Position numbers and translations under genes: made by a program. Below are positions 1-55,150 of a stretch of 64,000 bases of DNA, one piece after another. The notes under the pieces are model-generated. The model was not told the DNA's origin. It saw only the letters and a program-made list of their open reading frames with translations, and made no database searches. The stretch lies in NCBI GenBank assembly GCA_977016875.1, contig CDRNST010000060.1, positions 3,348,001 through 3,412,000 on the forward strand. Reading direction: 5' to 3'. Source of the stretch: Pavona decussata. Lineage: Eukaryota. Position 1 is the stretch's first letter, and every line of letters starts with the position of its first letter.

Positions 1-466
1 GCAGTGGTAAAAAACCCTACAAATTTGCAAAAAGCTAAGAATCTGTCTATGTAACTCCTACCTGTTTTGCTCGTAAAAGATATTCTAGGTGAGGTTCCAT
101 CCGTTGTGAAAATTTCAGAAGATTTCAGAGAAGGGAATTGAAGTAAATTAATATCGAGCCCAATACACACTGACACACGCCAGTATTTGAGTCGTTAAAC
201 GCAAGCCTCAAAGGCTTTATTTTACCAGCGACGGTTTGAGAACACAGTTCGTTCTTGATTATTACATTTTGAGGGATTTCAATGAATTGGTAGCAAGAAA
301 ACAAGAGAAAACTGGCTTTCGATGTGTACCATATTGCGCGCCATATTATGAATGATAACCGTATCGAGCCACCTTAAAAACCAACTTTAAAAAGACAATG
401 GTGTAAGTTTGACCTTTGTACGATTATGTAGCGAATTTCTTTTAATGTATTATTTCACGACTTTAC

Positions 467-2222
467 CTGCAGAGAAGGACGATAATTATCCCCATGGCAA
501 CAGTCACAGCAATAGAAACACCAATTATGATCCATTTCGTCTGTGACTCATCCATCCAGGACTCAAAGGGAGGGGGACTTCCTTCATCCTTGTGATATGC
601 CCGGATGTTGTAAATTTCCTTTTTGATCCTGGCAGACACCTTTCCAGATAATTCTTTCAGAGCTTGTAGCAATATATCCTGATTCATAACATAGTTTTGC
701 CCTTGACTGGTGTGCAGTACAACGTAGAAAGCTACGAGCAGATCACGACCACGCTCTTGAGGGAATTGGCTGAGGATATGAACACTTCCCTTGTGATCGC
801 TTTCTCCACTGATGGATCTGTGTACAATTTGAGAAAAGAATCGTGAGAACAATAACGTGAAAGAAAATTCAAAACGTATTTAAAGTTACCACTTACAAGA
901 GATTCTACAACATGACCTTCTACGTTTTATAAAAAATTTGATTGATCAGATAGTGATCAATGCAATTAAGGTTTGGTTAATATAGTAAGTCTTTACTGAA
1001 CACTACAAAAGTAAGGCGATATGCTAGTTATTGGAATTCGGTATTGTTTACACATGGTGCTGGGAGGGAAATAGGAAAAGAAGGGAAGGAAATAAGCTGA
1101 ACAATCTTAGACTTATTTCAGAGAAGAAGGATGATTTTTATTAATTATTAAAACGCACTGCAGAGGGTAATTTTTCTTACGCCCTCTTCAAGACGGGTGA
1201 ATACTATAAATCACACTTAGCTGCTTTTTTCTACTACTTTTTTTACAGGACGAGTTTTTTTTCTTGAGAACTGCGTAATGGTGAAAACCTCGAAAGTCCT
1301 CGAAACGTAGGTGATCTTGTCGTTTTGGAATAAGAAAATCCGGCTTGAATATCATCATTCAAAACAACTGCGTCAAATTCGTCGCTCACAAAGAGTTAAA
1401 TGAAGCTTCCTGGGATATATCAGTTCTTACTACTTCGCTAAAAACTTAAAGTCAGTTCTCGTATTCGTAGTCGTACTTATACTAGAGCCTGGAGGTCTCT
1501 TCTGTAATTACCTTTACTTTAGTTGAACAGGTTTTAGTGTAAGTAAGTAAGTAATCTTTATTTATACATGGTAAAAATTCATCAAGTCTAAAAAAGTACA
1601 GGGCCCAGTTGTTCAAAGCTCGATTAAGCTAATCCTGGATTAACGCAAACTCTGACTTGAGTTTAATTGCTAATGAACAAAGATTCTTCCTAATGATTCT
1701 CGGCCCTCAGTTTAAAGCCTCGATTAACTTTTAATCGGCTTTCGAACAACTCGGCCCAGAAGTATAAAATGTTAATATCTAAGTCTTAAATACATCATAT
1801 AACTAGTATATATGCTAATTACAATGTTAAGTGACTTATTTTCAGGGGACAATAACAGTCCTACATGACTCACCTTTTCGCTACGCTTGCACTATTATAA
1901 CAGGTGTCCCTTTCGCCGGTTAGGCAATAATCTACAGCAAGCAGGGCAACAATGTCCTTAAAATCGTGTGAAAGTCCAGTTTGCCACTGTCAACAATAAA
2001 TCAATGTGTTAGGTCTTTTAGGAACATCAAACATAAGATCTCTTACTTTTAAGGTTGTTGGGTACTTCACATAACAATAGTAAGAGTTACTTACTTGAAG
2101 TAAAGTGGCATTCCTTATTGTCAGAGCAACAGCATTGTTGATGCCGTCCGGGAACACGTCGGTTTTGACTGAGGTAGCTGGTGTGCTTGTTATTGACGGA
2201 TCGTCCGTTGTTGGAACAAATT
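467..2222 (-). CDS. Juxtamembrane SEA-like domain and transmembrane helix
   Basis: Exons 2222-2095 (short Thr/Ser linker..[15 protein letters not shown]), 1986-1874 ([25 protein letters not shown]), 817-467 (..LLVAFYVV..; [24 protein letters not shown]). Donor at 466 shows further exons lie left of the window. Confidence 0.88.
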
Positions 2223-3233: not shown

Positions 3234-3270
<37 letters not shown>

Positions 3271-6200
3271 TTAATAATCGGATTAAAAACAGTTACCTTC
3301 GCAGGTGTTGTTGATGCGCTGGAATCCTTCTTGACACTCACAGTGGAATGATCCCAAAGTATTAATACAGAGCTCCAACGAACCACCGCAGAAGACTTCA
3401 TCGACAAGATCACATTCATCGATGTCTAAAACCAACCAACAAACAGACAAATATCATGTGGTTTATTACATTATTGAAGACTCGTGAGAAAATTCCTAGG
3501 ATTCAGATATGGCTTCGGGGTGTAAGAGGCGAAAATTACCCAGCGGAGGCCTATAGTTTCCCCAAAATTTAGGCTATGACATTCAGTTAAAATTGGTCTT
3601 AATGTAATTGTAAGTTAACCAGACATCTTTTTTGTGGCAATGATAACAATGGTGAGGTTGAAACTGCGTCATTTCTGCGTCGTGATTTACATAAATCCGG
3701 CATCTGGACCGGATTCCTTATTGGAGCCGACATCTTGACCTGGATCGCCGTTTTTACAATATTCACTTTCCCGAGAGAATTGCGAATTGCCATGAGCCGA
3801 GTCGGTCTGTATTTTTTCAGCTTTTCCTTTTGCAACTGCTTTTAAAAGTTCAGTGCATATATAAACTGTGTATGAATGTCATAGATTAACAGTAATCGCA
3901 GGAGAGATGTATCTGTGCATCGTTGTGGGCTATAGTTTTATTAATTAACAATTTTACCGTTGCATCCCATTCGGTCTGGAGACAGATCGTAGCCGGAAAG
4001 GCAGGAGCACGTGTAACCTCCATCCATGTTGTGGCACAACTGTGAGCATTTGTGTTTATGTGTTGTACATTCATTGATATCTGGTGATGAAAAACGAAAT
4101 GTTAACGATTGTTATGACAGAAAATAATAATTACACTTACCGAACGTTTCAACTAAACAATTTTTTCTTTTAGGCCTTGACATGTCGGTTGCTATCAACT
4201 GTTGTTGTTGTTGTTTTTTGATCGACCATTTCCTTTCCGCCAAACCCGGTTAAGAGTAGCCTGCCATGAAATGACAACCCTTGAGTGGATTTTGTCAAAG
4301 AGAAAACAAACGAGCTTTTTCCCTTATTATTTTAAAAATTTGTCTTCTCAGTTTAAAGGGAAACGGGAATCATTAAGACGCAGAGGAGAAGACTTAAAAT
4401 AGATCCTGGAAGGAAAGATCGATGGAAGAGTCAAGGATTTTTCCTCAATTTTCTGGTCCATTTTTTTTACGATCCGCGAGAGCTGAATAGTGAAGATGGA
4501 ACTAAAACGCCTCGAGGGTTTTCTTTTTAATTCAATTCTTCAGTACACATTGTTGAAACGTTTCGAACAGGATTCAAATCTTTGGGAAAGTGCCTTAGTA
4601 GCGAAGCATGTACAATACACAAGATTTTCATTTAGTAACACTTGATTACCATGGCAAGTTCGGCCATCAGCGTTCAGTTGGTATCCTTTGTGGCAGGAAC
4701 ATCTTGGTTGACCATGATCCTCGCGACAAACATGCTGACATCCTGCTTCGGATGCATTACAGCGTGAAATAGCTGAACATAGGGGAAAAATAAACTAGAA
4801 TTAAATGCGCATACAAACTGAAAGTATGTTCAAACAAATTTAAATTGGTTTAAACTTTCATTCATCATCTATTCAACATTTTCTTTGTTAAATGGCGTTG
4901 AAACCGTTTGAACACTCCGTTCATCAAACATTTGCCCAACATCCGTCCAACTTTTGTTCAACAAATGTTGGGCAAATGTTGAAACCGTTTAAACGGGCCT
5001 TTACGCTTGCCGTGTGAGGACTCCTTCAATGGTACTTACGGACACAGGCGGTATTATCACTCGGGTCAACTTGGAATCCCTCGAAACACAAACAGTTACG
5101 GCCACCAGGATAGTTTGTGCATTTCTGCATGCAGTCATTGGATACCGCACACTCATCCACGTCTAAAACCAAAAAATCATTACACTATTAAACCAAGAAA
5201 TGAAATCCTCTACTTGCGTCATCGACAAATTCAGTGAGCTCTTGCGCACCTGGAGGATTCAGGAATTTGACTCCCCCGGATGGAAAGAAATTCTATTTGT
5301 TCGCCAACAGTAAAATTTTCATGAAAAAGTTGCCGTTCTGTTGAAAAAGGTCGGACATTGGGAAAACAAAGCGCATGATTTCTCTCAGCTTTATGGTATC
5401 CCACGAGGCTAAATTCATAAAGTTTCCTTAGGCTAAGATGAATCATCCGAATCTTACCTGTACAGCTAACGCCATCACTGTCCAGGGTATACCCTGGGTT
5501 ACAATCACACACATAGGAGCCCGGAGTGTCGATACATAACTGGCTACAGTTCGACAAAAGCTCAATACACTCATCGATGTCTGCGGAGTTGTAAAAAAAA
5601 ATAATACAAGTTAATTGATCGACTGATCGGCTGACAAAATGAATGGTTTATTGATTGACTGATCGGTTGGTTGGTTATCTTATTGAAAGAATGATTGCAA
5701 TTGAATAACTGACTAACCTGATTATAAGTAACAGACTGTTGCCTCTCTGATTGACTGACTGACTGACTGACTGACTGACTGACTGACTGACTGACTGACT
5801 GACTGACTGACTGACTGACCGACCGACTGACCGACTAACAGACTTACAAAGAGGTAAACTGATTGACTGAAAGACAGACCGACTGATTCATTATTTGACT
5901 GACTGGCTGATTGACTGACTTGCCGTCTAATTGTTTGACTGAAGAGCTAACGACTGTATGAGAGAAAAACACTTCCAGTAGCTGTAGATATTTTAAACAA
6001 CCGTTTGGGCATTTCAACTCTACAGAGTTTTTTAAACACTGTCTTAACCGGAAATAGAGTTGGTGATTAGGGTTAGAAATTATCTGTGTAGCAAGTTGTT
6101 TAGTATATTTAGCTATTTATTTATTTGGTTATTTATTTCTTTATTTATTATATAATAATCTATCTTTTGGCTTCTTTTCCCCTATTAAATGTATGTGTAA

Positions 6201-9200
6201 GCACTGTAAATATTAGTAGTATAGCGTGATATCGTAAACCAGATAGTGTAAGTATTGCAAAAACTGTAAGAATTGTAACTTTGTAAGTACTATAAGTGTT
6301 GCGTAGTACTGTAAATATTGTGTGTCTTAGGCTAATAAAAATTTTAAAAAAATTGTGTAGCAAACTACGGAAGATGTCAAACAATGGGATACGGCTGGTT
6401 CAGCCTCATACTTTCCCAGCCCCTTTGAAATAAGATGTGGGGTTCTCTGCTCTTACCATCACAGACTGTTCCATCTCCACTGTAGCCCGCGGGACACGGG
6501 CCGCATTGGTAGCCAGTTCCATTGGATGAAGATCTAAGATCGGTGCACTTCACACCTGGATAACAAGGCTGAATGTTTCTCCAGCATGCATCAATGATAT
6601 TTTCACAGTATTGCCCGGTGAGACCCGTGGGACATGCGCATGACAACAAGATAAATCTAGTACCGCTGTCCCGTTGCCTGTGAACGTCGTCGTCATCGAT
6701 GCAAATACTGCCATTTGTACACGGACACAGTTGAACAATTGGGTGGAGCTCTGATGACGCGTTCTTGCTGTCAGTCACGATAAACACAGGCTCAAACTGT
6801 TAATCAAATAGGAAAAAAAACTTAAGCTTTAACTAACTCGATCACATCCAAGGACGCCTCAGTAAGGAACTTTCAAACATAACGGACAAAAAGTATTCCT
6901 CTTCAAAAATCTTTGACAAATGAAGTGTCACTTAAAAACCTGTAGTTGAATGATTTGCACTATTTGGGGTCTCATCTATTAACTCAAAGGTCCGAAAGTA
7001 AATCTTATGAACCGTGATTTGACTGTTAATGTAAAAGGGGTTACTGTTTCTGCTTGGCTGAAGTCAAAAACTCGAAATCACATGACTTTTTGAGACCCTT
7101 TTGAGTCTGTGAAGGGAAGCCATTGTGGTGTTGTTTATTAAGCTGTGCAATGAGGCAGACACTAATAACCTTTGGTGTAAAAACACAAGAATGTTACTGT
7201 GTATCCAAGGCCATTTATGCAACCTGTAGCTTCCCGACATAACGTTTGAAAACGTTTTGAAGAGAATCCCCAACCCGTGATTTTATATACAGTATTGACC
7301 ATTGACAAACCTTTTGTGCTGAGGTCGGATGCCATCGAATGACGAGGTATTTGGATGTATTGGCGACAATTTCTACATTTGGGAAGTTGTTTACTGTAAA
7401 CACAAAATGGTCGCTCGAGTTGTGCTGTGCTGTGATGTTCACTTCCACAGCTTGGTTTATTGTGGCGCGGATCACTTTTGGCCCATGTATTCGAGGCGGG
7501 AAATTTGCTGTGGAGTAAAAAAAACAATTGTGTCAAGGAAATGCTGGCTTTTTTATTTGATTTGATGCTAATGTAAAGTGGCACGCCATGGTCGCTATAA
7601 AGTTTGTCCGGGTACATTTCTTGGCATTCTCTGCAAAGCCACTCCGTGAAATGATCAAATTTAACGGCTTTCTGTAGAACCTGAGCACACAATGGTGAAC
7701 TTCTGCAACTGGAAAGTACTGTTGTTGGATTTTTAACTCTTTCGACTTCAGTTAAAATTAGTGGGTAGGACCTTTCGGTTAATATCTGATGGGAAGACTT
7801 TAATCGTCTCCGAAGTTGGATTGAAAAACTGACGTTTCATTTGGTGTTTTGTTTGCCTAAAACTTTGCTTACATGGAAACATTATTTCTTTTCCTCACCC
7901 GGAAAGGACGAAAAACGTGGTTAAGAGGGTGCAATAACGCTAGATAGGATTTTCGGAAAGCCAACAGCAAATCGTAAATTTGGGGGATAGTTATATGTTC
8001 TTAAAATTTCCTGCCCCTTGAAAAATTCTGTAAAAGAATCCGAATACAAAAAAACTGTGTTTGCTTACTCAAATATCCCTTCCAAAGGCCTCAGATATTG
8101 GAGGACAGAAAACGACATTGGAACAGTTTTTCTCAAACGTATAAAAATTCATCAAGAGAAAACAAAGAAAATCACTGCTGTGACCGTGGTTTGGATATGT
8201 GTTCCTAATTACCATAAAATTTGGCCTTTAGCCTTGAATTTCTCCAAGAATTATTGATCATTTGAGAAGGCATATAGTAAACACTCGAAAATGTGTTTCA
8301 TCTGATATCCAAAGACCTCAAAAACGTTTAAAAAATTAAAAAACTCGGCTGCGCATCGTTTTTCAACCTACTTCTCAGTGTTTGGATATTTGATGAAACA
8401 CGCTTTCTCGTGTTTGATATCTTACTTCTTAATTTTTCTCAAGGGTTGTCTCCGGTTGATAATGCAAATGGTAAGGGTTAAAAAACTTCATGACATGGGA
8501 TAAAATTAATACAATAGCGTTATTTTACCGAGCTCTCTGTTTATCTGATTGTTTTTTTCCTCCAGCTTTCTCGTTGTCACTCCGTAAGATGTGTCTTCTG
8601 TAACCGCCGCATCAAACAAACAATTGATATTGTTACCACAGGCCTTCTCAGCTTGAAGTCTGAACGAGTCATTTGCCCATGCAATGTTGTCAATGAACAT
8701 TGGTACATAGCTCAGATCCATGAAGGTATAAGGGCTTTCCTGATCACTATATGTGAACAGTGATTGAGAAACATTGATCTGCCCTGGAAGACGGAAAGAG
8801 GAAGATGGTCTATTTACCTAATAGCATAAAACAGATGAGAAAAGCTTATAGCCAGAGAGGCAAAGTTATTGAAGTTTTTTCGACGTTTCATAAATAACAT
8901 ATTTTTGAACCCACAATCGATAATTTTCGTATATGGTTTTTCGAAGGCACAACATGCACATGTTAAAGGGGAAGTATCACAAAAATTTGATGTAATTTCA
9001 AAACCGAAAAATGTTTGTCTGACAATAGAAACAAAACAATTGGTGGCTAGGTTTGTTATAAATTATCACCTCAGTGCAAGAAAACTGTCGATTAGTGCCT
9101 CTGGCCAGGGACAGAGTAGGTTGCAATGGATTGAAACGTGAAAAATATCAGGCTAATGTTTTTCAAGTTCTCGTATTTTTGTTTCCAAAGTGTGCTAGAA

Positions 9201-24200: not shown

Positions 24201-25192
24201 ATGGCCGCCGAGTGATAAGGGTCTATTCCAACCATTTGGTTGTTCTCAAGTCAAAAACAATCTTATTGTATTGCTTGGGAGACTTTGCTTGAACATTAAC
24301 CTTCTTTGCATTTGGTGATCATTTTCGTTATTCTCATGAACTACACGTTTGATCAAGTAGCCGATTGTTGTAAGGAGAAAATAGATTCATGTCACTATTG
24401 AGGCTAGAAGGATATGTAAATGAGAAACTTAAAGGGTCAGTTATTAAAAGACAGTTTTAGACGGTGTTTAACAGAACCACGTTCTAAGCCATCTTCAATT
24501 TTGCCAACAATCATATCTAAACATTGTCTACGGCCGACGATAATAAGAAGGCTTTCATCACAGACATGAAAACTATTTATCTACTTAAAATAAACCACTT
24601 ATGACCAGATTTAGAGGCCCATACCCACTGATTGTCTTAAGCCGGGGCTTAAGTTAGACTCTGTTTAAATAACTGGCCATAAAGGTTTGAGTTTCCCAAT
24701 AAGACTAACTCTATTTTTAGCCAAAGCTTTAACGCCAAATTTGTGATCTCGTTTTCCCGCCAAAAATATCAAAATACGAAAATAAAACGTTGTTGAATTG
24801 TAGACCTTTATAATACCAAGTATGCTTCAAACTTTGAGAATAATTGGATAAAAAGCAAAAATATTACTACTAAATGGCTCACAATGGCCGGAAATTTAAT
24901 TTTACAAAAGTTGTATGATGTTGCCTTCCATATTCTCAGGGNNNNNNNNNNNNNNNNNNNNNNNNNNNNNNNNNNNNNNNNNNNNNNNNNNNNNNNNNNN
25001 NNNNNNNNNNNNNNNNNNNNNNNNNNNNNNNNNNNNNNNNNNNNNNNNNNNNNNNNNNNNNNNNNNNNNNNNNNAAGCAAAGACATGCAAAAATAACAGA
25101 GAGATCTAAGGCTTTTTTTTATTTTTTCTCTTGATAATGGAGTCAAAATGACTCCGAAACGTCGAGCCTTAAATCTCTCTGTTATTTTTGCA

Positions 25193-25271
<79 letters not shown>

Positions 25272-49200: not shown

Positions 49201-52200
49201 AACATCAACAAAGATTTCTTCAGACTGGTTTCTTTGGCAAGCCGGCGGAGAGTTTGTCTTTTAGTCTTACCAATTCCCACGTGCATCGAAAACGTTTTTG
49301 AGGCGATGCAGAGCTCTAAAAGAAGATGCCTTCTTTTCATCTATCATCTTAAACACTCTCCACAGTTTTCATTCTCGAAGTTCAGGGTGCTCTGAAGCCC
49401 CAAAAATGGCTGGTTGTGAAGGGGCCAGATCCCAAGGCTTTTCTCCGCTAGGAGGTCCCACCAAAATGGCTATTCTGGCTGAATGGAGCCCTGGAGTAAA
49501 GCCACGAAGCCTAATAACACTGAACTTAGGATACTTTATGAAATCAAGCCCTGGAGCCCTAATCTTCTTTGCGACCCCTCAAGTTGTTGCAAAATATTTC
49601 CTTTTATTACGTTTTAGAGCACTTTATTATTTTAGAGGTTCAAACACTGACTGGTTGAAAACTGAAGATTGATTTAAGGTAAAATATGCGTCCAATTTTT
49701 ACTTCACCACTAAGGTATGAAATTGTCGTGCGCAACATGCAGTTTGGAAAGTGAGGAAAATGTTACACCGTTTTTCGAAATCCAAGTCTCGTTACCATAC
49801 CAAGTGCACTTGTAAGAAAATTAACAATAAGGACTTACCTCTGCAATGGTGAAATTTGAAAACGTAAGAGAAAAAGCATTATCGGTGTCCTCTTGTGATG
49901 GAACTCGACGAACAATGCCACAGGGCGGTGGTGGAGCTGTCGTTGGAACTATTGAGGATAAGTTGTTGCAACATGTCAATAATATAACACAGACCATTTA
50001 CTTTTCGGTAAGACGCATGTATGCATCCTAGTCTGTCGTTCAGCTGAAGACACCCTTAAGGCTTTTCGAGCCCGAAAAGCAGGGCAATGCCGGGAGGTCA
50101 TATAGCAAACACCTTTCGGATTTTAAGTAGCCAATTAGCTACGGTGCACAAAAAACACCGTGACTATCCACCGTTTTGGTATATACTGATATGCACAAGA
50201 GACGTACCTGAACATGGTCCCTCATAGCATTCTCGAGTTTCATTTCTAGGTCCCGAACACTCATTTCCTCCAAACTGAGGAGGAGTACAGTTTCGATAAC
50301 GTATCTGAGTTCCATTTCCACAGGTTAGGCTGCATGGAGACCAAGCACCCCACGCTGTGAAGTTGCCATCAACTAGATATTGGCAAAAACAAAGACAAAA
50401 GTGAGTTTAAAGTCCGCATCCGAGAGAACCAGATTGCAGGACGATGAGACACAATATATTCATTTGAAACGATTCGTGACCACATACTTCGTCAAATGTC
50501 CGGTAGGGTTTGGGTTCCAGGCTTTGGACATGGAAAACAAAGCGACCATTTTACTAGTTGCGTGGCATGGTTAATACACCCCTTTATTATAGGCAGAATT
50601 GGTAGTAAAGGACATTGAATTTAAAAGGATTTGGCAAGTTCTTGAATGAACATAAAAAATCGTTTCCATTTTGTGAGTTCGAAAGATATCGGGCCTTAAC
50701 TAATACCTGGGAATTAAAAAATTCCCAAATCTCCTTGGATTATTGAATAGTGTAGGTAAACCTGTTTGCCTGACAGATTTTCAGTGAAACCGCTGAGATT
50801 GTTCATTGAGTCATGCGGCCTGCCCTGTACCTCATTAACCGAATCAAAAAAAAAAAACGTTCAACACCAACGCACTGTATGTCAGTTTGTGAAATACTAC
50901 AAACTAAACGCTATAACAGGCTCTCGTGTGAACAAAAATCGCTGTTAAGGCCAAGTAATACGGTCAACGATTGTTTGTCACATAAAAGAATACTAATTAT
51001 GCCTGCCATTATGAAAGAAGTCTATTACATTTGCTGCGCGACAAGTTGTAAAAAAAAGCTTCCCGTATTACTTGACCTTAAAGCTTAAAAATTTCGACTC
51101 ATATTGACAGTCAAAACCTTCTTCAAACAAAAAAAAAAATTATCGGAATTATCAATAGTATAAAGTTTCACCAGCGCCTTGCTATATATGCTTCTTCAAA
51201 AAAGTAAAGAGATTTTGAAATCGGTAGGCTGTAGTCATGAAGTATAAACCCAACAGCAGCACGAAAAAGCAGGGTTCAAGTACCTTAAACATTTTCAAAG
51301 AATATGCCACACTTTCTTCGTCTCTTCCCAAACTCATTAATAATTCATCAAGAGAAAATAAAGAAAATCACTACTGTGACCGCGGTTTGGATAGTGAGTG
51401 TTCCTAATTACCATAAAATTTTGCCAACTTTAGCCTTGAATTTCTCCAAGAATTATTGATCGTTTGAGAAGCCATATCAAACACTCGAAAGTGGGTTTCA
51501 TCAGACATCCAAACACCTCGAAGTTGTTTAAAACAACTCGGCTGCACCTCGTTTTTTCAACGTACTTCTTAGTGTTTGGATATCTGATGAAACACTCTTC
51601 CTCGTGTTTGATTTATTACATCAAGTTTACAATTCCCTGCCTTATCGAGGTGTGTACGTGAATGGGACATTACATGTACCCCCAACCCCCCCTCACCTCT
51701 TTCTCTATCCAATGATTCATTAAAGCACCGCTGAAGCTTTAACTTTCCATTTATGCTTTTCCGCTGAAACAGTATGGAACGTCGTTCATTTCCAAAGAAA
51801 ATTAGCGCCTTTTTGTGTTGGCATTGGTTTCCAGTTCAACGTGATTTTAAGGTAAATTTTTCGCTGCTATTTTGAAGAGGATTCTATCTCACAACAATTG
51901 TATCCACAAACCTGGCTGCGGGGGTGCAACTTCCCTTAAGAAGTCGTCAGCATTTCCTTCATTTCCTCTAGGATCATAACGAGCCACAACATAGTGTGCA
52001 TTTCCTCCCGAGGCCACCCCTACACCAAGCCGAAACGAAATTCGCCACACCACCTGGGTAAAGTGAAGCCACTGCTTGGTTGGGTCGATTGGTACCCCAT
52101 AACTAAAATTGTAGTTTGATATCTCGTTATACCAAGCTTCCACAATTGAACTGCAGCGAAAACATGACGATTGAGATGCATTGATGCATACGGGTCGGCT

Positions 52201-55150
52201 TGGAGAAAACGATTGAAATCCAAGATTTTCTCCAAGATTGTGGCTGCTGTCGTGTATGAAAGTTTGGTTCTGCAGAAGAAACTGAGACCAGTTTCGTGCG
52301 CCAGCGGCGACAGACTCACTCCAGGTCAAGGCTCTAACTCCATGCCGCAGTCGAAAGATGTTGTGTGAATCCAAACAATCTTGTTCAAAGAACGTCAGGC
52401 CTGCTGTTTAGGGAATTTCGCGAAAAAGACACAGCACATTACAACTGAATGCTGCAATTTTTGTCTGGCTCATGGCCATTATACCGCGAAGTCCTTTGTA
52501 TTTTATGTTCAAGATCACATTCTCAAAGTACCAGTCACAGCTAAGACTTATAAACACAATAAAGACTTTATAAGACTTATAAACACGACGGAAAGGTACG
52601 TCGACGTAACGTCCACTAACCGCCGTAAATTCTATTACCAACACTGTACGAGGATTACATTTGGATTAATTCAAGAAGACTGATGTTCTTATGGTAAAAC
52701 AGTAATCTCCTTTTCTATAACTATATTTTCAGTGAAATTCTTAATGTCTTCAATTTTCGACTTTTTGTTAAATTTTTCAGTCATTGAGTCTAGTTCCAAG
52801 TTTACGACGGGTGTAATTTTTTTTAGAACGTAAACACTCAAACATCGTTAAGTCGCTATCATTTTGCTGGCTGATTTTTTGGATGTCCTGATACATAACC
52901 AACAGATTTCTATTTGTTTGTTGTATTTAATAATATTTTCAATTTCAGCTAAAAACGTGGTACAAACTGCTTTACAAATAGCATATGAATTCTTGCAATA
53001 AATATTAGCCTTCTTACACCTGGCTATCCAAGTGGTTAAACATTTTTGCCTGCGCTAAGGCTACGAAAGACCATGTAATGTCTCTTGTAAACCAAAGCTT
53101 GGAAATTGCAATGTTTGTCACACTGCACGTTTTACAATACGAACATTAATATTCCTGACATTTTTAACTAAATGGAACTGAATATTGAACGCATCTATAA
53201 ATCATAGCAGGCGCGAGTTCTGTCATTCGTTTAGTCTCCTGAAAAACCTAGTGGGCAAGTTTGTCGGATGCAGATGTAGCAGACTAAATAACTGAATCAT
53301 TGTTTAAATTCAGACTAAACAAACTGTAAACTTTTTTTTTTTAAACTGTAGTTCTTCAATGTAGGTGGGACAAGACAAGTAAAAAGAAAAAAATGAACAT
53401 TGTGATTAAACTTTTTAGGCAAGAAGGAGGTCGCCAAGACCCTTAATGCTATTACTTTAGAGATACGCCTAGCCAAACTCGGTTTCTTACTTCAATAAAT
53501 TGGCCTGTGACATCTTAGTTATATTTGTGGTAGACAGATTACACACAAAGAAGAACCAAAATAACTTATATGAAATGTCTGGCCATGTTGTGTGCTTTTG
53601 TAGCGCGCATGATATAGCTTAAGTTCAACGACTTTGATTAGAAAACATCAGAATAATTCTGTTGAAGCAAATTCTAAAAGGTGATGTTTCACAGCACAGA
53701 CAGACAGCTTCTGCTCAAAGGCCAGAAACACATTTACTGACTCATAAGGTCCTGAAAAATACTCGAAATGGCTCTGCATTAGTTCACGTTGTTTTAACAT
53801 TGCAAAAATGCAGCAATATTGTCGACGAAAGCCAAATATATTAAAATAATAATCACCTTTGCACAAATAATCGTGGTTAAGTTATGCAATTAAATTTGCA
53901 CCCGATGAAGTTGCAAGATAACAGTTGTTAACCTACAACTAAGGTGAAATCTCTGCGACCCTCACATGTACAGCAACCTGTCACATAGTGCATACTCAGT
54001 TGATCCGAAACGAAGTGTAGGCTAAAAGCGAAACAAAACCAGCTCCAATATTTAAGAGCTCAGTAAAACACTTACTAAGGAATCTTTTAATTCCGTCTTT
54101 ATAAAGGCAATATAGCAGAAAACAAAACAGCCATTAATATGTAGAATTTTTGAAATAAATTTTTTGTAAGACAGTTGAACAAAGTACTTCGATATTTTCG
54201 TGGATAAGTTCAAAAAGTAAAATGCTTCATTCTCTGTCATCAAAATTCTCGAGGAAAGAGCCGAGTGCAGAATGTTATTTGAAGTTGTTAGTCATTTATC
54301 TCAGGAAAATAATAGACAGTAAACATTCATGATCCGATACATGGATTATATTGATCAAACGAAGCTTGCATCTTTCGGTAATTTTTTCTTTCTAATCTTA
54401 ATGTGGGAGTACAAAATACAATTAGAATTTTCATGTATATGCTATCAATAAAAAAAACAGCTGAAACTAAGCGAGTGGCCGTCCATATTTCTTCCTGTTT
54501 GAGTGCGACCACTCAAGTTAGGGCCACTTTAATGCAATTAACGTTGACTCCGAGGATTAGAAATAGAAAGTATGACTTGAGATAACAAATTAGCAAGATG
54601 AGCAAGGAGTAATGTTCATCATGATCAAGAGCTGTCTCCGGAATCGATGACCTGCTGTTTACTGGTTAGTTGTTTTAACCATTGAGCCACTCCGAGACTC
54701 ATGGCGACCACGGACATTTACTATGTTCATATATGACGAACGTACTGCGTACTTCTAAGATCACGAATGTCGAAAGCGTCCCGATATGGTGATAAATAAA
54801 GAAAGATTGCGAGAGGTTTATGTGTTGTAAAATAGAGATATAACGAGGACACTTTAAAGACGTAAAATGAAAAGTTCGATCAACTTAATTCGCCTATAAA
54901 TAGCAACATAAAAAATTCAAAAAAACAAGGCCAAAACTGACAACATGTTTATGTTTAAACGAATTAAGTTTCCAATGATTATTGACGATCTTATTACATC
55001 ATTAACTGAACTTCGTCCTGTTTTTAACACATATCTATCAAAACTGCAATAATCTCAAGAAACACACAAAAGCTACTTACCAACTTGAACAGAATTTCTG
55101 CAAGCCAACGAGAAAAAGAGTACGATCAAAGAAAATTTACTGGGCGGCAT
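467..55150 (-). CDS. Giant MUC4-like type I transmembrane mucin (SP-CAP-[TSP1-PTS-SEA-like]x7-TSP1x5-NIDO-AMOP-VWD-EGFx7-SEA-like-TM), 53 coding exons, ~3,900 aa, 3' end outside window
   Basis: Manual spliced model, all introns GT..AG, all phases compatible. Exons 5'->3': 55150-55081, 52400-51912, 50372-50208, 49948-49839, 49135-49050, 48845-48658, 47924-47754, 47040-46574, 45434-45349, 45045-44858, 44436-44266, 43547-42802, 41708-41623, 41321-41134, 40712-40542, 39823-39204, 38064-37979, 37675-37488, 37065-36895, 36176-35485, 34345-34260, 33956-33769, 33346-33176, 32456-31936, 30796-30711, 30407-30220, 29788-29618, 27510-27263, 26389-26301, 25770-25571, 23908-23738, 22118-21948, 21224-21054, 20213-20043, 18725-18555, 17989-17853, 16214-15861, 15506-15406, 14821-14726, 14129-13618, 12324-12106, 10187-9855, 8783-8529, 7507-7311, 6796-6457, 5580-5458, 5162-5040, 4772-4650, 4080-3958, 3425-3297, 2222-2095, 1986-1874, 817-467 (sum 11,699 nt). 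NIDO-AMOP-VWD-EGF-TM is the MUC4-type core. That all exons lie on one transcript is inferred from phase continuity. Confidence 0.85.
1601..1758. mobile_element. MITE with TIRs (related copy at ~20818-20942)
   Basis: GGGCCCAGTTGTTCAAAG ... CTTTCGAACAACTCGGCCC. The second copy has GCCGAGTTGTTCGAA ... TTCGAACAACTCGGC. Confidence 0.75.
2385..2670. repeat. Degenerate ~110-bp tandem repeat (GTGACCATTCAAATGAAAGCTACTGAG..TACTTTCCTGT..TTTATTATG)
   Basis: About 2.5 copies here, and a fragment near 11995-12040. Confidence 0.75.
2980..3270 (+). mobile_element. tRNA-derived SINE-like element with (TAT)n tail
   Basis: A-box-like TGGCACAGTGG at the 5' end, body GTACTCCGGTTTTCCCCTCTCC, and a (TAT)n tail at ~3237-3269. 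Confidence 0.65.
3297..7507 (-). CDS. Linker exon plus seven EGF/cbEGF-like domains
   Basis: Exon 7507-7311 (NFPPRIHGP.., beta-rich linker), 6796-6457 (two EGF-like), and 5580-5458 (DIDEC..), 5162-5040 (DVDEC..), 4772-4650, 4080-3958 (DINEC..), 3425-3297 (DIDEC..): six-Cys EGF pattern, phase 1-1. Confidence 0.92.
5750..5835. repeat. (GACT)n microsatellite with degenerate flanks
   Basis: Direct reading. Confidence 0.95.
8145..8425. mobile_element. Hairpin-ended dispersed repeat, family H1 (other copies 16316-16589, inverted 16590-16882, 51330-51620)
   Basis: Shared AATTCATCAAGAGAAAACAAAGAAAATCACT..GTGGTTTGGATATG..AAACACTCGAAA..CTCGGCTGCGCCTCG..GTGTTTGAT sequence in four places. Confidence 0.85.
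8529..12324 (-). CDS. VWD domain (with GDPH) and following Cys-containing segment
   Basis: Exons 12324-12106 ([30 protein letters not shown]), 10187-9855 (..[24 protein letters not shown]), 8783-8529 ([22 protein letters not shown]). Confidence 0.93.
8967..9334. mobile_element. MITE with TTAA target duplication (Kolobok-like termini)
   Basis: ttaa|AGGGGAAGTATCA ... TGATACTTCCCCT|ttaa. TTAA plus purine-purine termini fits Kolobok better than piggyBac (inference). Confidence 0.8.
10879..11180. repeat. Inverted repeat pair (~32 bp arms), probable MITE interior
   Basis: CCGACACAGCGGCAAAATGAGTGCGCATGCTC at ~10880 and its reverse complement at ~11156-11187. Confidence 0.7.
11285..11698. mobile_element. 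MITE with TTAA target duplication and internal palindrome
   Basis: ttaa|AGGAAACCTCCACT ... AGTGGAGGTTCCCT|ttaa. Internal inverted arms TTTTAAATTTCCCGGG..GGATTTCATGACGT / ACGTCATGAAATCC..CCCGGGAAATTTAAAA. Confidence 0.8.
12514..12645. mobile_element. Short MITE
   Basis: GAGTTGCATAAAA.TTAACG.CGGGC ... GCCCGACGTTAAATTTTATGCAACTC inverted termini. Confidence 0.7.
13187..13557 (-). mobile_element. tRNA-derived repeat with direct and inverted terminal segments
   Basis: Minus strand TAGCTCAGTAGTAGAGC (A box)..GGTTCGACTCC (B box) at ~13280-13345. Direct repeat at 13187/13447, inverted repeat at 13228-13281 / 13504-13557. Confidence 0.7.
13618..14129 (-). CDS. End of NIDO plus AMOP domain exon
   Basis: [11 protein letters not shown] then [39 protein letters not shown], the AMOP cysteine pattern. 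Phase 2-1. Confidence 0.92.
14726..17989 (-). CDS. NIDO domain exons
   Basis: Exons 17989-17853 ([18 protein letters not shown]), 16214-15861 ([31 protein letters not shown]), 15506-15406 ([25 protein letters not shown]), 14821-14726 ([13 protein letters not shown]): typical NIDO motifs. Confidence 0.9.
16316..16882. mobile_element. Two inverted H1 copies forming a ~570-bp imperfect palindrome
   Basis: TTCTCAAACTC..AATTCATCAA at the left, TTGATGAATT..GAGTTTGAGAA at the right, junction GTGTTTGAT|GTAATATATCAAACAC near 16589. Confidence 0.88.
18082..18365. mobile_element. MITE
   Basis: AAGGCCCGTTTACA ... TGTAAACGGGCCTT terminal inverted repeats. Confidence 0.7.
18555..23908 (-). CDS. Five single-exon TSP1 (thrombospondin type 1) domains
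   Basis: 171-nt phase 1-1 exons at 23908-23738, 22118-21948, 21224-21054, 20213-20043, 18725-18555. Each reads VDGNFTxWxxWxxCSxx CxxG..R.R.C.NP.P..GG..C.G......C....C. Confidence 0.93.
19829..20006. mobile_element. Palindromic MITE
   Basis: AATAGGCCA.TTCCGAGTTG.TGTGAACCTCATTA ... TAATGAGGTTCACA.CAACTCGGAA.TGGCCTATT. Confidence 0.85.
21260..21485. mobile_element. MITE with TAA flanks and internal GATCGCA repeats (Harbinger-like)
   Basis: taa|AGGCTGGTTTCCATATGATC ... GATCATATGGAAACCAGCCT|taa, with an extra internal terminus at ~21323-21340. Confidence 0.8.
22190..22890 (+). mobile_element. Fragmented SINE-like element interrupted by a decayed LINE 3' fragment (~22285-22605)
   Basis: SINE-like pieces CACATTGTCTCTCT, CGACATACTGCTGGG, GGGTTACCCTGC..ATGGACTAG..CCCATCCA..GGAGTAG..TGCTACGGAAACC. 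The insert has frameshifted [18 protein letters not shown] similarity to CR1/L2-type RT C-termini and a TAAACAAAG(TATCGT)n tail. Confidence 0.55.
23241..23455. other. Assembly gap (215 N)
   Basis: Run of N. Confidence 1.
24060..24227. mobile_element. Palindromic MITE
   Basis: AGATCCTTATCAC.CGGCGGCCATGTTG.GTCTC ... GAGACTCAACATGGCCGCCG.GTGATAAGGGTCT. Confidence 0.85.
24942..25074. other. Assembly gap (133 N)
   Basis: Run of N. Confidence 1.
25198..25268. repeat. (AAT)n microsatellite
   Basis: Direct reading. Confidence 0.97.
25313..25554. mobile_element. Palindromic MITE immediately 3' of a splice donor
   Basis: TAGACCATTTTACAGTTGTGTGCTTAGTGAC ... GTCACTAAGCACACAACTGTAAAATGGGCTA. It ends ~16 bp from the donor at 25570. 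Confidence 0.85.
25571..29788 (-). CDS. Cassette G (divergent): TSP1 + Thr/Ser-rich linker + SEA-like domain
   Basis: Exons 29788-29618 (TSP1), 27510-27263 ([47 protein letters not shown]), 26389-26301 ([30 protein letters not shown]), 25770-25571 ([38 protein letters not shown]). Same phase pattern as A-F. The last two exons are missing from the ORF track. Confidence 0.85.
26415..26710. mobile_element. Hairpin-ended dispersed repeat, family H2
   Basis: CATTAATAATTCAT motif shared with H1. Long hairpin GCAGCACGTGTTTTATCG..AAAACCAC-TC-GGCTAAGCC-TC-GTGGTTTT..CGATAAAACACTGCTGC. Confidence 0.7.
29190..29553. mobile_element. MITE
   Basis: CTTACAGTCAA.CCAGGTCACGCGT.AAC ... GTTTACGCGTGACCTGG.TTGACTGTAAG. 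Confidence 0.82.
30220..33346 (-). CDS. Cassette F: TSP1 + (TPAPSG)n linker + SEA-like domain
   Basis: Exons 33346-33176, 32456-31936 (521 nt), 30796-30711, 30407-30220. Confidence 0.88.
31308..31612. mobile_element. Compound MITE carried in every cassette intron (also ~34857, 38577, 42221, 45946)
   Basis: CCAGGGGCTAGATTCACAAAG..CTTTGTGAA..CCTGG followed by GATTCATGAA..TTCATGAATGTGGCCCCAGG. It was duplicated along with the array. Confidence 0.65.
33769..37065 (-). CDS. Cassette E: TSP1 + (TPAPSG)n linker + SEA-like domain
   Basis: Exons 37065-36895, 36176-35485 (692 nt), 34345-34260, 33956-33769. Confidence 0.88.
37488..40712 (-). CDS. Cassette D: TSP1 + (TPAPSG)n linker + SEA-like domain
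   Basis: Exons 40712-40542, 39823-39204 (620 nt), 38064-37979, 37675-37488. Confidence 0.88.
41134..44436 (-). CDS. Cassette C: TSP1 + (TPAPSG)n linker + SEA-like domain
   Basis: Exons 44436-44266, 43547-42802 (746 nt), 41708-41623, 41321-41134. Confidence 0.88.
44858..47924 (-). CDS. Cassette B: TSP1 + (TPAPSG)n linker + SEA-like domain
   Basis: Exons 47924-47754 (171 nt), 47040-46574 (467 nt), 45434-45349 (86 nt), 45045-44858 (188 nt). Canonical splice sites, in frame. Confidence 0.88.
47978..48318. mobile_element. Hairpin-ended dispersed repeat, family H3, unique to the A/B intron
   Basis: Arms AACAAATCGACGGCA..TATGGTCTATACTCTTATAGACCATAAAATGACG / CGTCATTTTATGGTCTATAAGAGTATAGACCATAG..TGCCGTCGATTTGTT around the tip AACCAC-TC-GCCTGCGGC-TC-GTGGTT. 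Confidence 0.8.
48658..50372 (-). CDS. Cassette A (4 exons): TSP1 + short linker without VNTR + SEA-like domain
   Basis: Exons 50372-50208 ([28 protein letters not shown]), 49948-49839 ([37 protein letters not shown]), 49135-49050 ([29 protein letters not shown]), 48845-48658 ([31 protein letters not shown]). Phases 1-1, 1-0, 0-2, 2-1. Confidence 0.88.
51912..52400 (-). CDS. Exon encoding a CAP/SCP (GAPR-1/PR-1-like) domain
   Basis: 489-nt phase 1-1 exon: [55 protein letters not shown], the CAP family signature motifs. Confidence 0.92.
54630..54800 (-). mobile_element. Degenerate relative of the tRNA-derived repeat at 13.2-13.5 kb
   Basis: CATTGAGC..GAGACTC.TGG.GA..CATTT.ACTA.GT.CAT..GAC.AAC.T.CTGC.TACT..GAT..GAATGTCGAA matches 13333-13422. 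Confidence 0.55.
55081..55150 (-). CDS. Putative first coding exon, signal peptide [23 protein letters not shown](G)
   Basis: ATG at 55150 (alternative in-frame ATG at 55192, in-frame stop further upstream), hydrophobic core [12 protein letters not shown], strong donor G|gtaagt. Phase 1 matches the CAP exon acceptor. Confidence 0.7.

What the first reader, a model, noticed from the sequence alone, without database searches (positions are those of the whole stretch)
467..55150. A ~3,900-aa MUC4-like membrane mucin that carries a CAP domain at the tip of a long modular stalk
Seen: 53 phase-consistent exons linking a signal peptide, a CAP domain, 12 TSP1, 8 SEA-like domains, NIDO-AMOP-VWD, 7 EGF and a TM helix. 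Known: NIDO-AMOP-VWD-EGF-TM is the MUC4 core, and a TSP1-bearing mucin-like protein of this type has been reported from coral skeletal organic matrix. CAP domains (PR-1/GAPR-1/CRISP) bind lipids, sterols or metals and are mostly small secreted proteins. Inference: this protein displays a CAP head far from the membrane on a glycosylated beads-on-a-string spacer, a possible surface sensor, adhesin or defence tether. I do not recognise this full architecture, and automatic annotation would probably split it into several genes.
Basis: partly seen in the sequence, partly recalled or inferred. Interest (0 to 1): 0.88.

Follow-up and report, generated by a model that had tools for sequence, protein, structure and literature searches.

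The report
CAP-headed membrane mucin of a coral
This coral gene encodes a roughly 3,900-residue membrane-anchored mucin, the counterpart of a known coral skeleton-matrix protein, and its previously unknown front end turns out to be a small CAP (GAPR-1-like) domain on a long glycosylated stalk.

Summary
Confirmed. The minus strand holds one expressed gene with 53 GT-AG exons in the window (55150 down to 467). A last exon lies about 1.2 kb beyond the window start. The CDS is 11,688 nt (3,895 aa) with no stop.

Domain order: signal peptide, GAPR-1-type CAP, TSP1, seven cassettes (TSP1, Pro/Thr/Ser repeat, 120-aa ferredoxin-fold domain), four further TSP1, NIDO, AMOP, VWD with GDPH, C8-3, seven EGF, an eighth ferredoxin-fold domain, TM, and a 44-aa tail.

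- **Transcript support, this species:** an RNA contig joins 5'UTR/signal peptide to CAP, TSP1 and cassette A exactly at the predicted sites.
- **Transcript support, relatives:** one transcript contig of another coral runs from 5'UTR/signal peptide/CAP into NIDO. Two more reach the TSP1 after the last cassette.
- **Genomic ortholog:** it is colinear from CAP to the tail exon.
- **Assembly gaps:** both lie in introns, and the frame holds across them.

The gene is the ortholog of the coral skeletal "mucin-like/mucin4-like" protein, whose published sequences are cut at the N-terminus. The CAP head is the new piece. The "SEA-like" domains match cadherin MAD domains best (Z 10.8) and canonical SEA only weakly (Z about 5). 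Function is untested. A giant Ser-rich exon upstream may be a neighbouring gene or an alternative 5' part.

The parts
55081..55186 (-). Exon 1: at least 36 nt of 5'UTR, ATG at 55150 (an in-frame ATG also at 55192), signal peptide, donor G|GTAAGT, phase 1.
   Evidence: The RNA contig X1 record 1 covers 55186-55081 and joins it to 52403. An in-frame TGA sits at 55225-55223. The exon and about 500 bp upstream are conserved in the ortholog.
51912..52403 (-). Exon 2: CAP domain of the GAPR-1 type, with the His-Glu-Glu-His tetrad and four extra Cys.
   Evidence: Pfam CAP E 1.3e-17. Best solved relative is human GAPR-1 (1smb), E 8.5e-17 over the full length. RNA contig borders are exact. Conservation is shown.
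50208..50372 (-). Exon 3: first TSP1 repeat, phase 1/1.
   Evidence: Pfam TSP_1 E 6.4e-16. RNA contigs X1 and X5 join it to 51912 and 49948.
48658..49948 (-). Cassette A ferredoxin-fold (MAD/SEA-like) domain. Exons 49948-49839, 49135-49050 and 48845-48658.
   Evidence: Gene model. Joint 50208/49948 appears in X1 and X5. It is 82% identical to cassettes B-F.
44858..47924 (-). Cassette B. TSP1 exon 47924-47754; Pro/Thr/Ser repeat plus domain part a 47028-46574; part b 45434-45349; part c 45045-44858.
   Evidence: The 18-bp tandem repeat spans 46676-47035. S+T+P content is 60%.
41134..44436 (-). Cassette C. Exons 44436-44266, 43535-42802, 41708-41623 and 41321-41134.
37488..40712 (-). Cassette D. 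Exons 40712-40542, 39811-39204, 38064-37979 and 37675-37488.
33769..37065 (-). Cassette E. Exons 37065-36895, 36155-35485 (the acceptor is less certain), 34345-34260 and 33956-33769.
30220..33346 (-). Cassette F. Exons 33346-33176, 32444-31936, 30796-30711 and 30407-30220.
25571..29788 (-). Cassette G (divergent). TSP1 exon 29788-29618; short Pro/Thr/Ser stretch plus part a 27480-27263; part b 26389-26301; part c 25770-25571.
   Evidence: It is 32-34% identical to the other cassettes, E 1e-23. Orthologous exons occur in the same order in the other coral and in transcripts L037, L041 and L042.
24942..25074 (.). Assembly gap inside intron 30 (25570-23909).
   Evidence: Phase is 1 on both sides. 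The letters were not looked up.
23241..23455 (.). Assembly gap inside intron 31 (23737-22119).
   Evidence: Phase is 1 on both sides. The letters were not looked up.
18555..23908 (-). Five TSP1 exons, all 171 nt and phase 1/1: 23908-23738, 22118-21948, 21224-21054, 20213-20043 and 18725-18555. The first of them follows cassette G as every other cassette is followed by a TSP1.
   Evidence: Pfam TSP_1. The order is conserved in the ortholog.
14726..17989 (-). NIDO region. Exons 17989-17853, 16214-15861, 15506-15406 and 14821-14726.
   Evidence: Pfam NIDO E 9.8e-9 and 5e-11. Splice sites were read. Conserved in the ortholog.
13618..14129 (-). AMOP exon.
   Evidence: Pfam AMOP E 2e-5. It is single-copy in this genome; the next best match is 35-37% identical. 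It is 66% identical in the ortholog.
8529..12324 (-). VWD and C8-3. Exons 12324-12106 (starts with GDPH, residue 3020), 10187-9855 and 8783-8529.
   Evidence: Pfam VWD E 3.5e-9 and C8-3_MUC4 E 6.7e-12. GDPH is conserved in the ortholog. The exons are 79-82% identical in the ortholog.
6457..7507 (-). Exon 7507-7311 (unassigned, probably beta-rich) and exon 6796-6457 (two EGF-like Cys patterns).
   Evidence: Gene model. They are 74% and 69% identical in the ortholog. Pfam EGF is only weak, E 0.19.
3297..5580 (-). Five EGF exons, phase 1/1: 5580-5458, 5162-5040, 4772-4650, 4080-3958 and 3425-3297. Four hit Pfam EGF_CA; 4772-4650 hits only the EGF-type families FXa_inhibition and cEGF.
   Evidence: Pfam EGF_CA, FXa_inhibition and cEGF. 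The borders of 4080-3958 were read. Conserved in the ortholog.
535..2222 (-). Eighth, membrane-proximal ferredoxin-fold domain and juxtamembrane stretch. Exons 2222-2095, 1986-1874 and the first part of 769-467.
   Evidence: It is 28% identical to cassette G over 132 aa, E 1.3e-11. Conserved in the ortholog.
467..534 (-). TM helix (534-472), then Cys-Arg and the donor CAG|GTAAAG at 467/466, phase 2. An in-frame TAA at 465-463 applies only if the intron is retained.
   Evidence: The ortholog has CAG|GTAAGT at the same place. A conserved tail exon lies 1.17 kb downstream, outside the window.

Best explanation
**Shown.** This is one gene for a type I transmembrane mucin of the MUC4 family. It is the ortholog of the coral 'mucin-like protein' (MLP, 'mucin4-like' SOMP) found in Acropora skeletons. 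In this lineage the mature N-terminus is a GAPR-1-type CAP domain.

Behind the CAP come a TSP1 and seven cassettes. Each cassette holds a TSP1, a Pro/Thr/Ser tandem repeat and a 120-aa ferredoxin-fold (MAD/SEA-like) domain. Then follow four more TSP1, NIDO-AMOP-VWD-C8-3, seven EGF, an eighth ferredoxin-fold domain, a TM helix, and a 44-residue tail ending in T-S-L.

**Inferred.**
- The Pro/Thr/Ser repeats (about 1,000 residues, 60% S+T+P, 106 N-x-S/T sites in the whole protein) are heavily glycosylated and hold the CAP head far from the apical membrane.
- The conserved GDPH at the start of VWD is an autocleavage site, as in MUC4. It would give a shed alpha part (CAP, stalk, NIDO, AMOP) held to a membrane beta part (VWD, EGF, TM, tail). 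That would explain how a membrane protein reaches the skeleton matrix or mucus.
- The CAP head keeps the His-Glu-Glu-His tetrad and would bind divalent cations or lipids, or drive self-association.
- TSP1 repeats would bind matrix components.
- The tail (an RRIS site, and T-S-L at the end) would link to cortical scaffolds.
For: **Gene model.** It has 53 GT-AG exons in phase with no stop, plus a conserved tail exon.

**RNA of this species.** Contig X1 (807 nt) equals 55186-55081 + 52403-51912 + 50372-50208 + 49948 onward. A contig in X5, from another study, joins 50374-50208 to 49948-49839 and runs 272 nt further.

**Transcripts of relatives.**
- L042 is one ORF holding 5'UTR with a stop, SP, CAP, CAP, PT repeats, domain, TSP1, G-type domain, TSP1, TSP1 and the start of NIDO.
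- L037 and L041 hold SP, CAP, two cassettes, the G-type domain and TSP1.
- They align to model residues 1986-2443 with E around 1e-143 to 1e-146.

**Published sequence.** MLP B3EWY9 reads PT linker, cassette domain, three TSP1, then NIDO.

**Genomic ortholog.** ENA contig ctg90535 is colinear from CAP to the tail exon. At the exons checked the splice borders match. The TSP1-to-cassette introns predicted there are only 371-476 bp.

**No extra exons.** Only model exons are conserved between the two species in the 13-30.5 kb stretch.

**Domains.**

**CAP.** GAPR-1 is the best solved relative, and the tetrad is conserved.

**GDPH.** It is conserved in the ortholog.

**Literature.** Coral mucin4-like SOMPs carry N-terminal TSP1 and are truncated at both ends in the published models.
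Against: - No single transcript of this species spans cassettes B-F, which are near-identical and defeat short-read assembly. The link from cassette A to cassette G in this genome therefore rests on phase logic and on relatives.
- The A. millepora RefSeq model listed for MLP starts with a different signal peptide and a Ser-rich region. A matching Ser-rich exon lies upstream here, so a second, longer isoform or a different 5' end is possible.
- GDPH cleavage, glycosylation, ligand binding by CAP, cellular location and presence in the skeleton are all untested here.
- The cassette copy number could be mis-assembled, and a TSP1 exon could hide in a gap.
Confidence: 0.8

Rival explanations
1. There are two adjacent genes. 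One encodes a secreted CAP-TSP1-cassette protein, like the paralog on contig C204 or the red-coral CAP-like matrix protein. The other is a separate MLP gene that starts somewhere before NIDO.
For: - A paralog in this genome has CAP, one cassette, TSP1 and Sushi, with no NIDO within 78 kb.
- C. rubrum CR_3-4 is a free-standing CAP + TSP1 + PT-rich protein.
- No transcript of this species was laid across cassettes B-G.
Against: - L042 carries CAP and NIDO on one ORF, and L037 and L041 carry CAP through to the G-type cassette and the next TSP1.
- B3EWY9 bridges the cassette domain to NIDO.
- Every exon in between is an internal phase-matched exon.
- No first or last exon is conserved there.
- The ortholog's introns at the candidate boundary are 371-476 bp.
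Confidence: 0.06
2. The gene is longer at its 5' end. An upstream signal-peptide exon (extended coordinates 69882-69810) and a giant Ser-rich exon (66514-61763, about 1,550 aa) would be spliced in phase 1 into exon 2 or a later exon. In that isoform the CAP is not at the tip, or is skipped. Exon 1 would be an alternative first exon.
For: - The upstream exons lie on the same strand. The signal-peptide exon has a phase-1 donor, and the Ser-rich exon has an acceptor-like site in phase 1.
- The upstream signal peptide closely resembles the start of A. millepora XP_029211660.1, which is followed by a Ser-rich region and is listed as the GenBank counterpart of MLP.
- A Ser-rich exon also lies upstream in the ortholog.
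- No conserved downstream exon for a separate Ser-rich gene was seen.
Against: - Four transcript contigs, one of this species and three of relatives, start with a 5'UTR carrying a stop, then the signal peptide, then CAP.
- Exon 1 and its upstream 500 bp are conserved like a promoter.
- The apparent donor CCAG|GT is part of the repeat motif A-P-G-T and occurs in every unit.
- The Ser-rich ORF stops 31 aa (here) and 2 aa (ortholog) after the repeats, as a last exon would.
- The ortholog has a retroelement gag ORF and another gene-like ORF in between.
- The RefSeq model is a prediction and may merge neighbours.
Confidence: 0.12
3. The gene is real, but the number of cassettes (five near-identical 3.5-3.7 kb units, B-F) is an assembly artefact. 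The true protein would then be shorter or longer.
For: - Cassette domains C-F are 98-99% identical in protein.
- Two assembly gaps lie just downstream.
- The ortholog has only three cassettes.
Against: - The five units differ in length (3,488-3,724 bp), in repeat number (20-36 copies of the 18-bp unit) and in point changes. That is not expected of one collapsed or duplicated unit.
- Cassette number varies naturally between species.
Confidence: 0.1

Closest known systems
Coral skeletal 'mucin-like protein' (A. millepora MLP, UniProt B3EWY9) and A. digitifera 'mucin4-like' SOMP (aug_v2a.09809)
   Same: - Both have a cassette-type domain, then TSP1 repeats, NIDO, AMOP, VWD and EGF, and a TM helix is reported for the A. 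millepora protein.
- The printed start of B3EWY9 matches cassette G, exons 31-33 and the NIDO exons here motif by motif.
- The papers note that TSP1 repeats in front of a MUC4 core are special to corals.
   Different: - Published sequences are cut at the N-terminus, so no signal peptide, CAP or cassette array has been described.
- B3EWY9 has 3 TSP1 before NIDO, against 5 here.
- The RefSeq model for A. millepora starts with a Ser-rich region instead.
- Presence of this protein in a skeleton was not tested here.
Vertebrate MUC4 (sialomucin complex)
   Same: Both have a NIDO-AMOP-VWD core, a GDPH motif at the VWD start, a C8-3_MUC4 match, EGF domains, a single TM helix, a short tail, and a large O-glycosylation-type tandem repeat region N-terminal of the core.
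   Different: - MUC4 has no CAP, no TSP1 and no ferredoxin-fold cassette domains.
- Here the repeat region is split into five blocks between folded domains.
- There are seven EGF here rather than two or three (own knowledge of MUC4).
Corallium rubrum CR_3-4 'CAP-like' skeletal matrix protein
   Same: Both have a signal peptide, a GAPR-1-type CAP, TSP1, and Pro/Thr-rich repeats. [quoted passage not shown]
   Different: - As published it is about 720 aa (2,166-nt cDNA), with no NIDO-AMOP-VWD and no reported TM helix.
- It is listed there as a protein separate from the mucin (CR_2).
- In this stony coral both kinds of part sit on one polypeptide.
Human GAPR-1 (GLIPR2; PDB 1smb, 4aiw)
   Same: It is the best solved relative of the head domain over its full length, E 8.5e-17. 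Both are a minimal CAP fold without a C-terminal extension, keep the His-Glu-Glu-His tetrad, and have the V-V-A-R-Y motif in place of the Cys-containing CAP2 motif.
   Different: - GAPR-1 is cytosolic, lipid-anchored on the Golgi, and has no signal peptide.
- The domain here is extracellular and has a 14-residue insertion with three further Cys.
- It is fused to a mucin.
Membrane-adjacent domains (MAD) of protocadherin-15, cadherin-23 and CELSR1; SEA domains of MUC16 and MUC1
   Same: - All share the beta-alpha-beta-beta-alpha-beta ferredoxin-like fold in extracellular, often membrane-near positions.
- MAD12 of PCDH15 gives Z 10.8, rmsd 2.2 A over 99 residues; CDH23 MAD28 gives Z 8.5; CELSR1 gives Z 8.8.
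- MUC16 SEA5 gives Z 5.4.
   Different: - Sequence identity is only 12-16%, and there is no Pfam SEA match.
- There is no G|SVVV-type autocleavage motif.
- The domain occurs eight times along the stalk, not only next to the membrane.

Membership tests
MUC4-type transmembrane mucin | NIDO, AMOP and VWD in this order | tested here: met
   Pfam NIDO (E 9.8e-9 and 5e-11), AMOP (2e-5), VWD (3.5e-9) and C8-3_MUC4 (6.7e-12) lie on consecutive exons.
MUC4-type transmembrane mucin | EGF domains, a single C-terminal TM helix and a short cytoplasmic tail | tested here: met
   There are five EGF exons (four passing Pfam EGF_CA) and two EGF-like patterns. A 21-residue hydrophobic helix lies at 534-472. A 44-residue tail exon is conserved in the ortholog.
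MUC4-type transmembrane mucin | Large Pro/Thr/Ser tandem-repeat (mucin) region N-terminal of the core | tested here: met
   An 18-bp repeat occurs in 20-36 copies in five exons. That is 994 residues with 59-62% S+T+P. Glycosylation itself was not tested.
MUC4-type transmembrane mucin | GDPH autocleavage into alpha and beta subunits | tested here: inconclusive
   The GDPH motif is present at residue 3020, at the VWD start, and is conserved in the ortholog. Cleavage cannot be tested with these tools.
Coral MLP / mucin4-like SOMP (ortholog) | Sequence correspondence to B3EWY9 across cassette domain, TSP1 and NIDO | tested here: met
   I compared the sequence printed with exons 28-37 by eye. The AMOP exon is single-copy in the genome.
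Coral MLP / mucin4-like SOMP (ortholog) | Protein found occluded in the skeleton | not testable with these tools
   No proteome of this species was available.
CAP superfamily (GAPR-1-like) | CAP fold profile and the CAP1, CAP3 and CAP4 motifs (HFTQ.VW, HN..R, GENL) | tested here: met
   Pfam CAP E 1.3e-17 covers profile positions 1-116 of 117. The motifs are visible.
CAP superfamily (GAPR-1-like) | His-Glu-Glu-His tetrad of the central cavity | tested here: met
   All four residues align with those of GAPR-1. They are kept in the window, P0160 and P0170. Two paralog-type sequences have lost the last His.
SEA domain (PF01390) | Match to the SEA profile | tested here: not met
   There was no SEA hit at E up to 10 on single exons, nor at E up to 0.01 on whole domains in transcripts L037 and L042. 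The only sequence-level hint is a language-model lead, score 0.82.
SEA domain (PF01390) | SEA fold and G|SVVV autocleavage site | tested here: inconclusive
   The model (pLDDT 78.5) has the same fold class. SEA chains score only Z 5.0-5.4, against 8.5-10.8 for cadherin MAD domains. No G-S-V-V-V-like motif is present.
Thrombospondin type 1 repeat | TSP_1 profile with the W..W and C-S-x-T-C-G motifs | tested here: met
   All 12 exons pass Pfam TSP_1, E 8.9e-12 to 6.4e-16.

The most novel reading that the evidence does not exclude
The CAP head would be a working module that binds metal ions or lipids, or self-assembles. After GDPH cleavage it would be shed together with the mucin stalk. It would then organise the extracellular layer at the tissue-skeleton or tissue-seawater interface. 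In stony corals, the 'CAP-like' and 'mucin' components known as separate abundant skeleton-matrix proteins in red coral would thus be delivered as one membrane-born precursor. The number of CAP, TSP1 and cassette units varies between coral lineages.
Probability: 0.25. Interest if true: 0.7.

Novelty: new variant of a known kind. Interest (0 to 1): 0.55.

Why it matters
The coral mucin-like skeleton protein has been listed in skeletal proteomes since 2013, with both ends missing from the published sequences. This locus and its relatives supply a complete model.

- **New N-terminus:** it is a signal peptide and a CAP domain with an intact cation-binding tetrad, on a stalk of alternating mucin repeats, TSP1 repeats and ferredoxin-fold domains.
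- **New C-terminus:** it is a conserved tail ending in T-S-L.

This gives concrete peptides to look for in skeleton and mucus proteomes. It also gives a testable route (GDPH cleavage) from a membrane protein to a matrix protein. It links to the CAP-TSP1 protein that is abundant in red-coral skeleton.

The locus also shows that gene models for this region are likely to be split or merged. One warning is the five near-identical cassettes. The other is the neighbouring Ser-rich exon, which one RefSeq model appears to attach to the gene.

Tried and rejected
**Exon choices**
- A candidate exon at 20529-20398 from the first automatic model was dropped. It has a weak score, no domain, and is not conserved in the ortholog.
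- A 19-nt exon and a shortened NIDO exon from that model were replaced after I read the sequence.

**Searches that gave little**
- A protein search with the cassette G part c ORF found nothing.
- A search with the exon 31 ORF found only single-exon genomic ORFs and no junction.
- The representative search with CAP gave no long single-CAP relative.
- Earlier notes of this scan held nothing on this place.
- Pfam gave no SEA hit on single exons at E up to 10, nor on whole transcript ORFs at E up to 0.01.

**Readings I revised**
- I first read the loci L001, L023 and L031 as a 'short type' gene. The transcript L037 matches their exons at 87-91% and runs on into a G-type cassette, so that label is unsafe for those loci. 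It still holds for the paralog on C204 of this genome.
- The apparent phase-1 donor of the Ser-rich exon turned out to be part of its repeat motif, so it is no evidence of splicing.

- The joined, spliced protein of the window was built only inside scripts, for length, phase and internal comparison. It was not sent to any search or folding tool.
- Whole-domain searches and the fold used transcript contigs of relatives, by reference.
- B3EWY9 and XP_029211660.1 were compared by eye only.
- The letters of the two gaps were not looked up or filled.
Full report
**1. What is in the sequence**

The window (G000:C60:3348001-3412000) is AT-rich eukaryotic DNA with two N runs, 23241-23455 and 24942-25074. 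Minus-strand open frames carry clear domain signals. Pfam confirms the following:
- CAP at 52407-51892, E 1.3e-17
- TSP1
- NIDO at 16235-15717 and 15524-15405
- AMOP at 14293-13598
- VWD at 12352-12080 and 10221-9850
- C8-3_MUC4 at 8817-8509
- five EGF exons: four pass Pfam EGF_CA, and 4772-4650 hits only the EGF-type families FXa_inhibition and cEGF

I wrote a small exon-chaining program using splice-site weights, codon log-odds and phase continuity. I corrected its output by reading the sequence.

The result is 53 exons from 55150 to 467. All have AG and GT borders, and the 3,851 codons carry no stop.

Five exons carry an 18-bp (six-residue) tandem repeat in 20-36 copies. Together they hold 994 residues with about 60% Ser+Thr+Pro.

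**2. The gaps**

Under the model, 24942-25074 lies in the intron between 25571 and 23908. The run 23241-23455 lies in the intron between 23738 and 22118. The phase is 1 on both sides of each.

In a genomic ortholog and in transcripts of relatives, the same exon types follow each other with nothing else in between. Nothing is visibly missing. A further 171-nt TSP1 exon of phase 1/1 could still hide in a gap, because TSP1 number differs between species. I did not look up or fill the gap letters.

**3. Expression and the CAP junction**

Runs holding the CAP exon were found in seven studies. I laid four runs on 49800-55200.
- One 807-nt contig of run X1 consists of 55186-55081, 52403-51912, 50372-50208 and then 49948 onward. 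Three introns are removed at GT..AG sites, exactly at the predicted borders, with at least 36 nt of 5'UTR.
- A contig of X5, from another study, joins 50374-50208 to 49948-49839. It carries 272 further letters outside the laid stretch, which fits exons 5 and 6 (274 nt).

So signal peptide, CAP, TSP1 and cassette A are one spliced RNA. An in-frame TGA at 55225-55223 closes the frame upstream.

**4. One gene or two**

A paralog on contig C204 has CAP, one cassette, TSP1 and a Sushi exon, with no NIDO within 78 kb. A two-gene reading therefore had to be tested. Four lines speak against it.

- **(a) Genomic ortholog.** I walked along an ENA contig of another coral (ctg90535; CAP 72% identical). 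It gives the order CAP, three TSP1, cassette, TSP1, cassette, TSP1, G-type cassette, TSP1, then orthologs of exons 32-35, NIDO, AMOP, VWD, C8-3, EGF, last domain, TM and tail exon. All lie on one strand and are colinear over about 50 kb. At the exons checked the splice borders and phases match. The TSP1-to-cassette introns predicted there are 371-476 bp.
- **(b) No extra conserved exon.** Between 13 and 30.5 kb, only model exons are conserved between the two species.
- **(c) Published sequence.** The A. millepora MLP sequence B3EWY9, as printed in a paper's supplement, reads Pro/Thr linker, cassette domain, three TSP1, NIDO.
- **(d) Transcript contigs of relatives.** JGI contigs that read as spliced transcripts, with homologs of consecutive exons abutting, gave the strongest support. 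L042 (3,702 nt) is one ORF with a stop-closed 5'UTR, signal peptide, two CAP domains, Pro/Thr repeats, cassette domain, TSP1, G-type domain, two TSP1 and the start of NIDO. L037 and L041 carry signal peptide, CAP, two cassettes, the G-type domain and TSP1. They align to model residues 1986-2443 at 51-64% identity, E 2e-143 and 9e-146.

What remains unproven in this species is a single molecule across the near-identical cassettes B-F.

**5. The 3' end**

The last exon in the window ends with the TM helix, Cys-Arg, and CAG|GTAAAG. The following TAA is in frame only if the intron is kept. The ortholog has CAG|GTAAGT at the same place.

A block 1.17 kb downstream, outside the window (C60:3347301-3347169), is 81% identical in DNA between the species. 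It reads in phase as a 44-residue tail with R-R-N-R-R, an R-R-I-S site, and T-S-L before the stop. The ortholog ends in T-T-L.

The complete CDS is 54 exons, 11,688 nt and 3,895 aa. It would be 14 aa more if the ATG at 55192 is used.

**6. The parts**

- **CAP head.** Its best solved relative is human GAPR-1 over the full length, E 8.5e-17, with all four residues of the His-Glu-Glu-His tetrad aligned. The tetrad and four extra Cys are conserved in the orthologous lineage.
- **Cassette domains.** They never match Pfam SEA. A language-model search gave SEA clusters only as a weak lead, score 0.82.
- **Fold of the cassette domain.** I folded a whole domain from transcript L037, with four homologs as its alignment. 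The model has pLDDT 78.5, pTM 0.73 and beta-alpha-beta-beta-alpha-beta order.
- **Structural matches.** PCDH15 MAD12 gives Z 10.8 (rmsd 2.2 A over 99 residues). Nup54 gives 9.1, CELSR1 8.8 and CDH23 MAD28 8.5. After a gap come MUC16 SEA5 at Z 5.4 and 1ivz at 5.0. The fold class is the one SEA belongs to, but the nearest known domains are cadherin membrane-adjacent domains.
- **Eighth domain.** It sits next to the membrane and is related to cassette G, E 1.3e-11.
- **VWD.** It begins with GDPH, conserved in the ortholog. In MUC4 this is the autocleavage site (own knowledge).

**7. What is known**

Acropora skeleton proteomes list a mucin-like or mucin4-like protein with TSP1 repeats in front of NIDO-AMOP-VWD-EGF. 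The papers call this arrangement special to corals and note truncated ends.

Red coral has an abundant matrix protein made of a GAPR-1-type CAP, TSP1 and Pro/Thr repeats. It is listed there beside a separate mucin.

No paper combined AMOP, NIDO and a CAP domain. The representative search found no long protein with an orthologous CAP. I therefore file this as a new variant of a known kind: the known coral MLP with a newly seen head and stalk, plus a newly seen tail.

**8. Open point**

Upstream on the same strand lies a stop-to-stop ORF of 1,584 aa made of Ser-rich repeats (66514-61763, running past the window end). Further up is a signal-peptide exon. That signal peptide resembles the start of the A. 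millepora RefSeq model named as MLP's counterpart. A Ser-rich exon also lies upstream in the ortholog.

Several observations favour a neighbouring gene:
- transcripts start at exon 1;
- the promoter-like region upstream of exon 1 is conserved;
- the Ser-rich ORF ends soon after its repeats.

An alternative long isoform is not excluded.

Noticed in passing
window 61763-64000 and beyond (extended coordinates to 66514; signal-peptide exon at 69882-69810, i.e. C60:3417882-3417810): A giant Ser-rich repeat ORF (1,584 aa stop to stop) lies on the same strand, 6.6 kb upstream of exon 1, and is preceded by a signal-peptide exon. That N-terminus resembles the start of A. millepora XP_029211660.1. It is either a neighbouring mucin gene or an alternative 5' part of this gene.
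   Followed up: partly
window 51248-51790 (intron 2): A high-copy repeat. RNA-run contigs pile up to summed depths of thousands to tens of thousands, with many loose ends and internal joints. It looks like a dispersed element present in many transcripts.
   Followed up: no
G000:C204:2330353-2334950 (L010, L011): A paralog with a CAP exon (74% identical), one Pro/Thr plus ferredoxin-fold cassette, TSP1 and a Sushi exon. No NIDO, AMOP or VWD lies within 78 kb downstream.
   Followed up: partly
L042 (JGI Ga0099809_10222659) 182-3700: In another coral the same kind of transcript has two CAP domains in tandem before the mucin repeats. Its repeat unit (T-T-G-P/Q-P-D-I) is different. The head and stalk vary between lineages.
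   Followed up: partly
C60:3347301-3347169 (outside the window) and L029 18194-18323: The conserved cytoplasmic tail has an R-R-I-S site and ends in T-S-L or T-T-L, which fits a class I PDZ-ligand pattern.
   Followed up: no
L035 5985-7523 and 9820-10218: In the ortholog's upstream region there is a retroelement gag ORF (PEG10_N-capsid) and a gene-like ORF with a signal peptide, TSP1 and an EGF-like pattern. The latter is absent from the window.
   Followed up: no
window 25172-25323 and 5574-5946: A long trinucleotide run lies next to the first gap. A 12-bp repeat (reading S-Q-S-V in one frame) lies inside the intron between exons 45 and 46.
   Followed up: no
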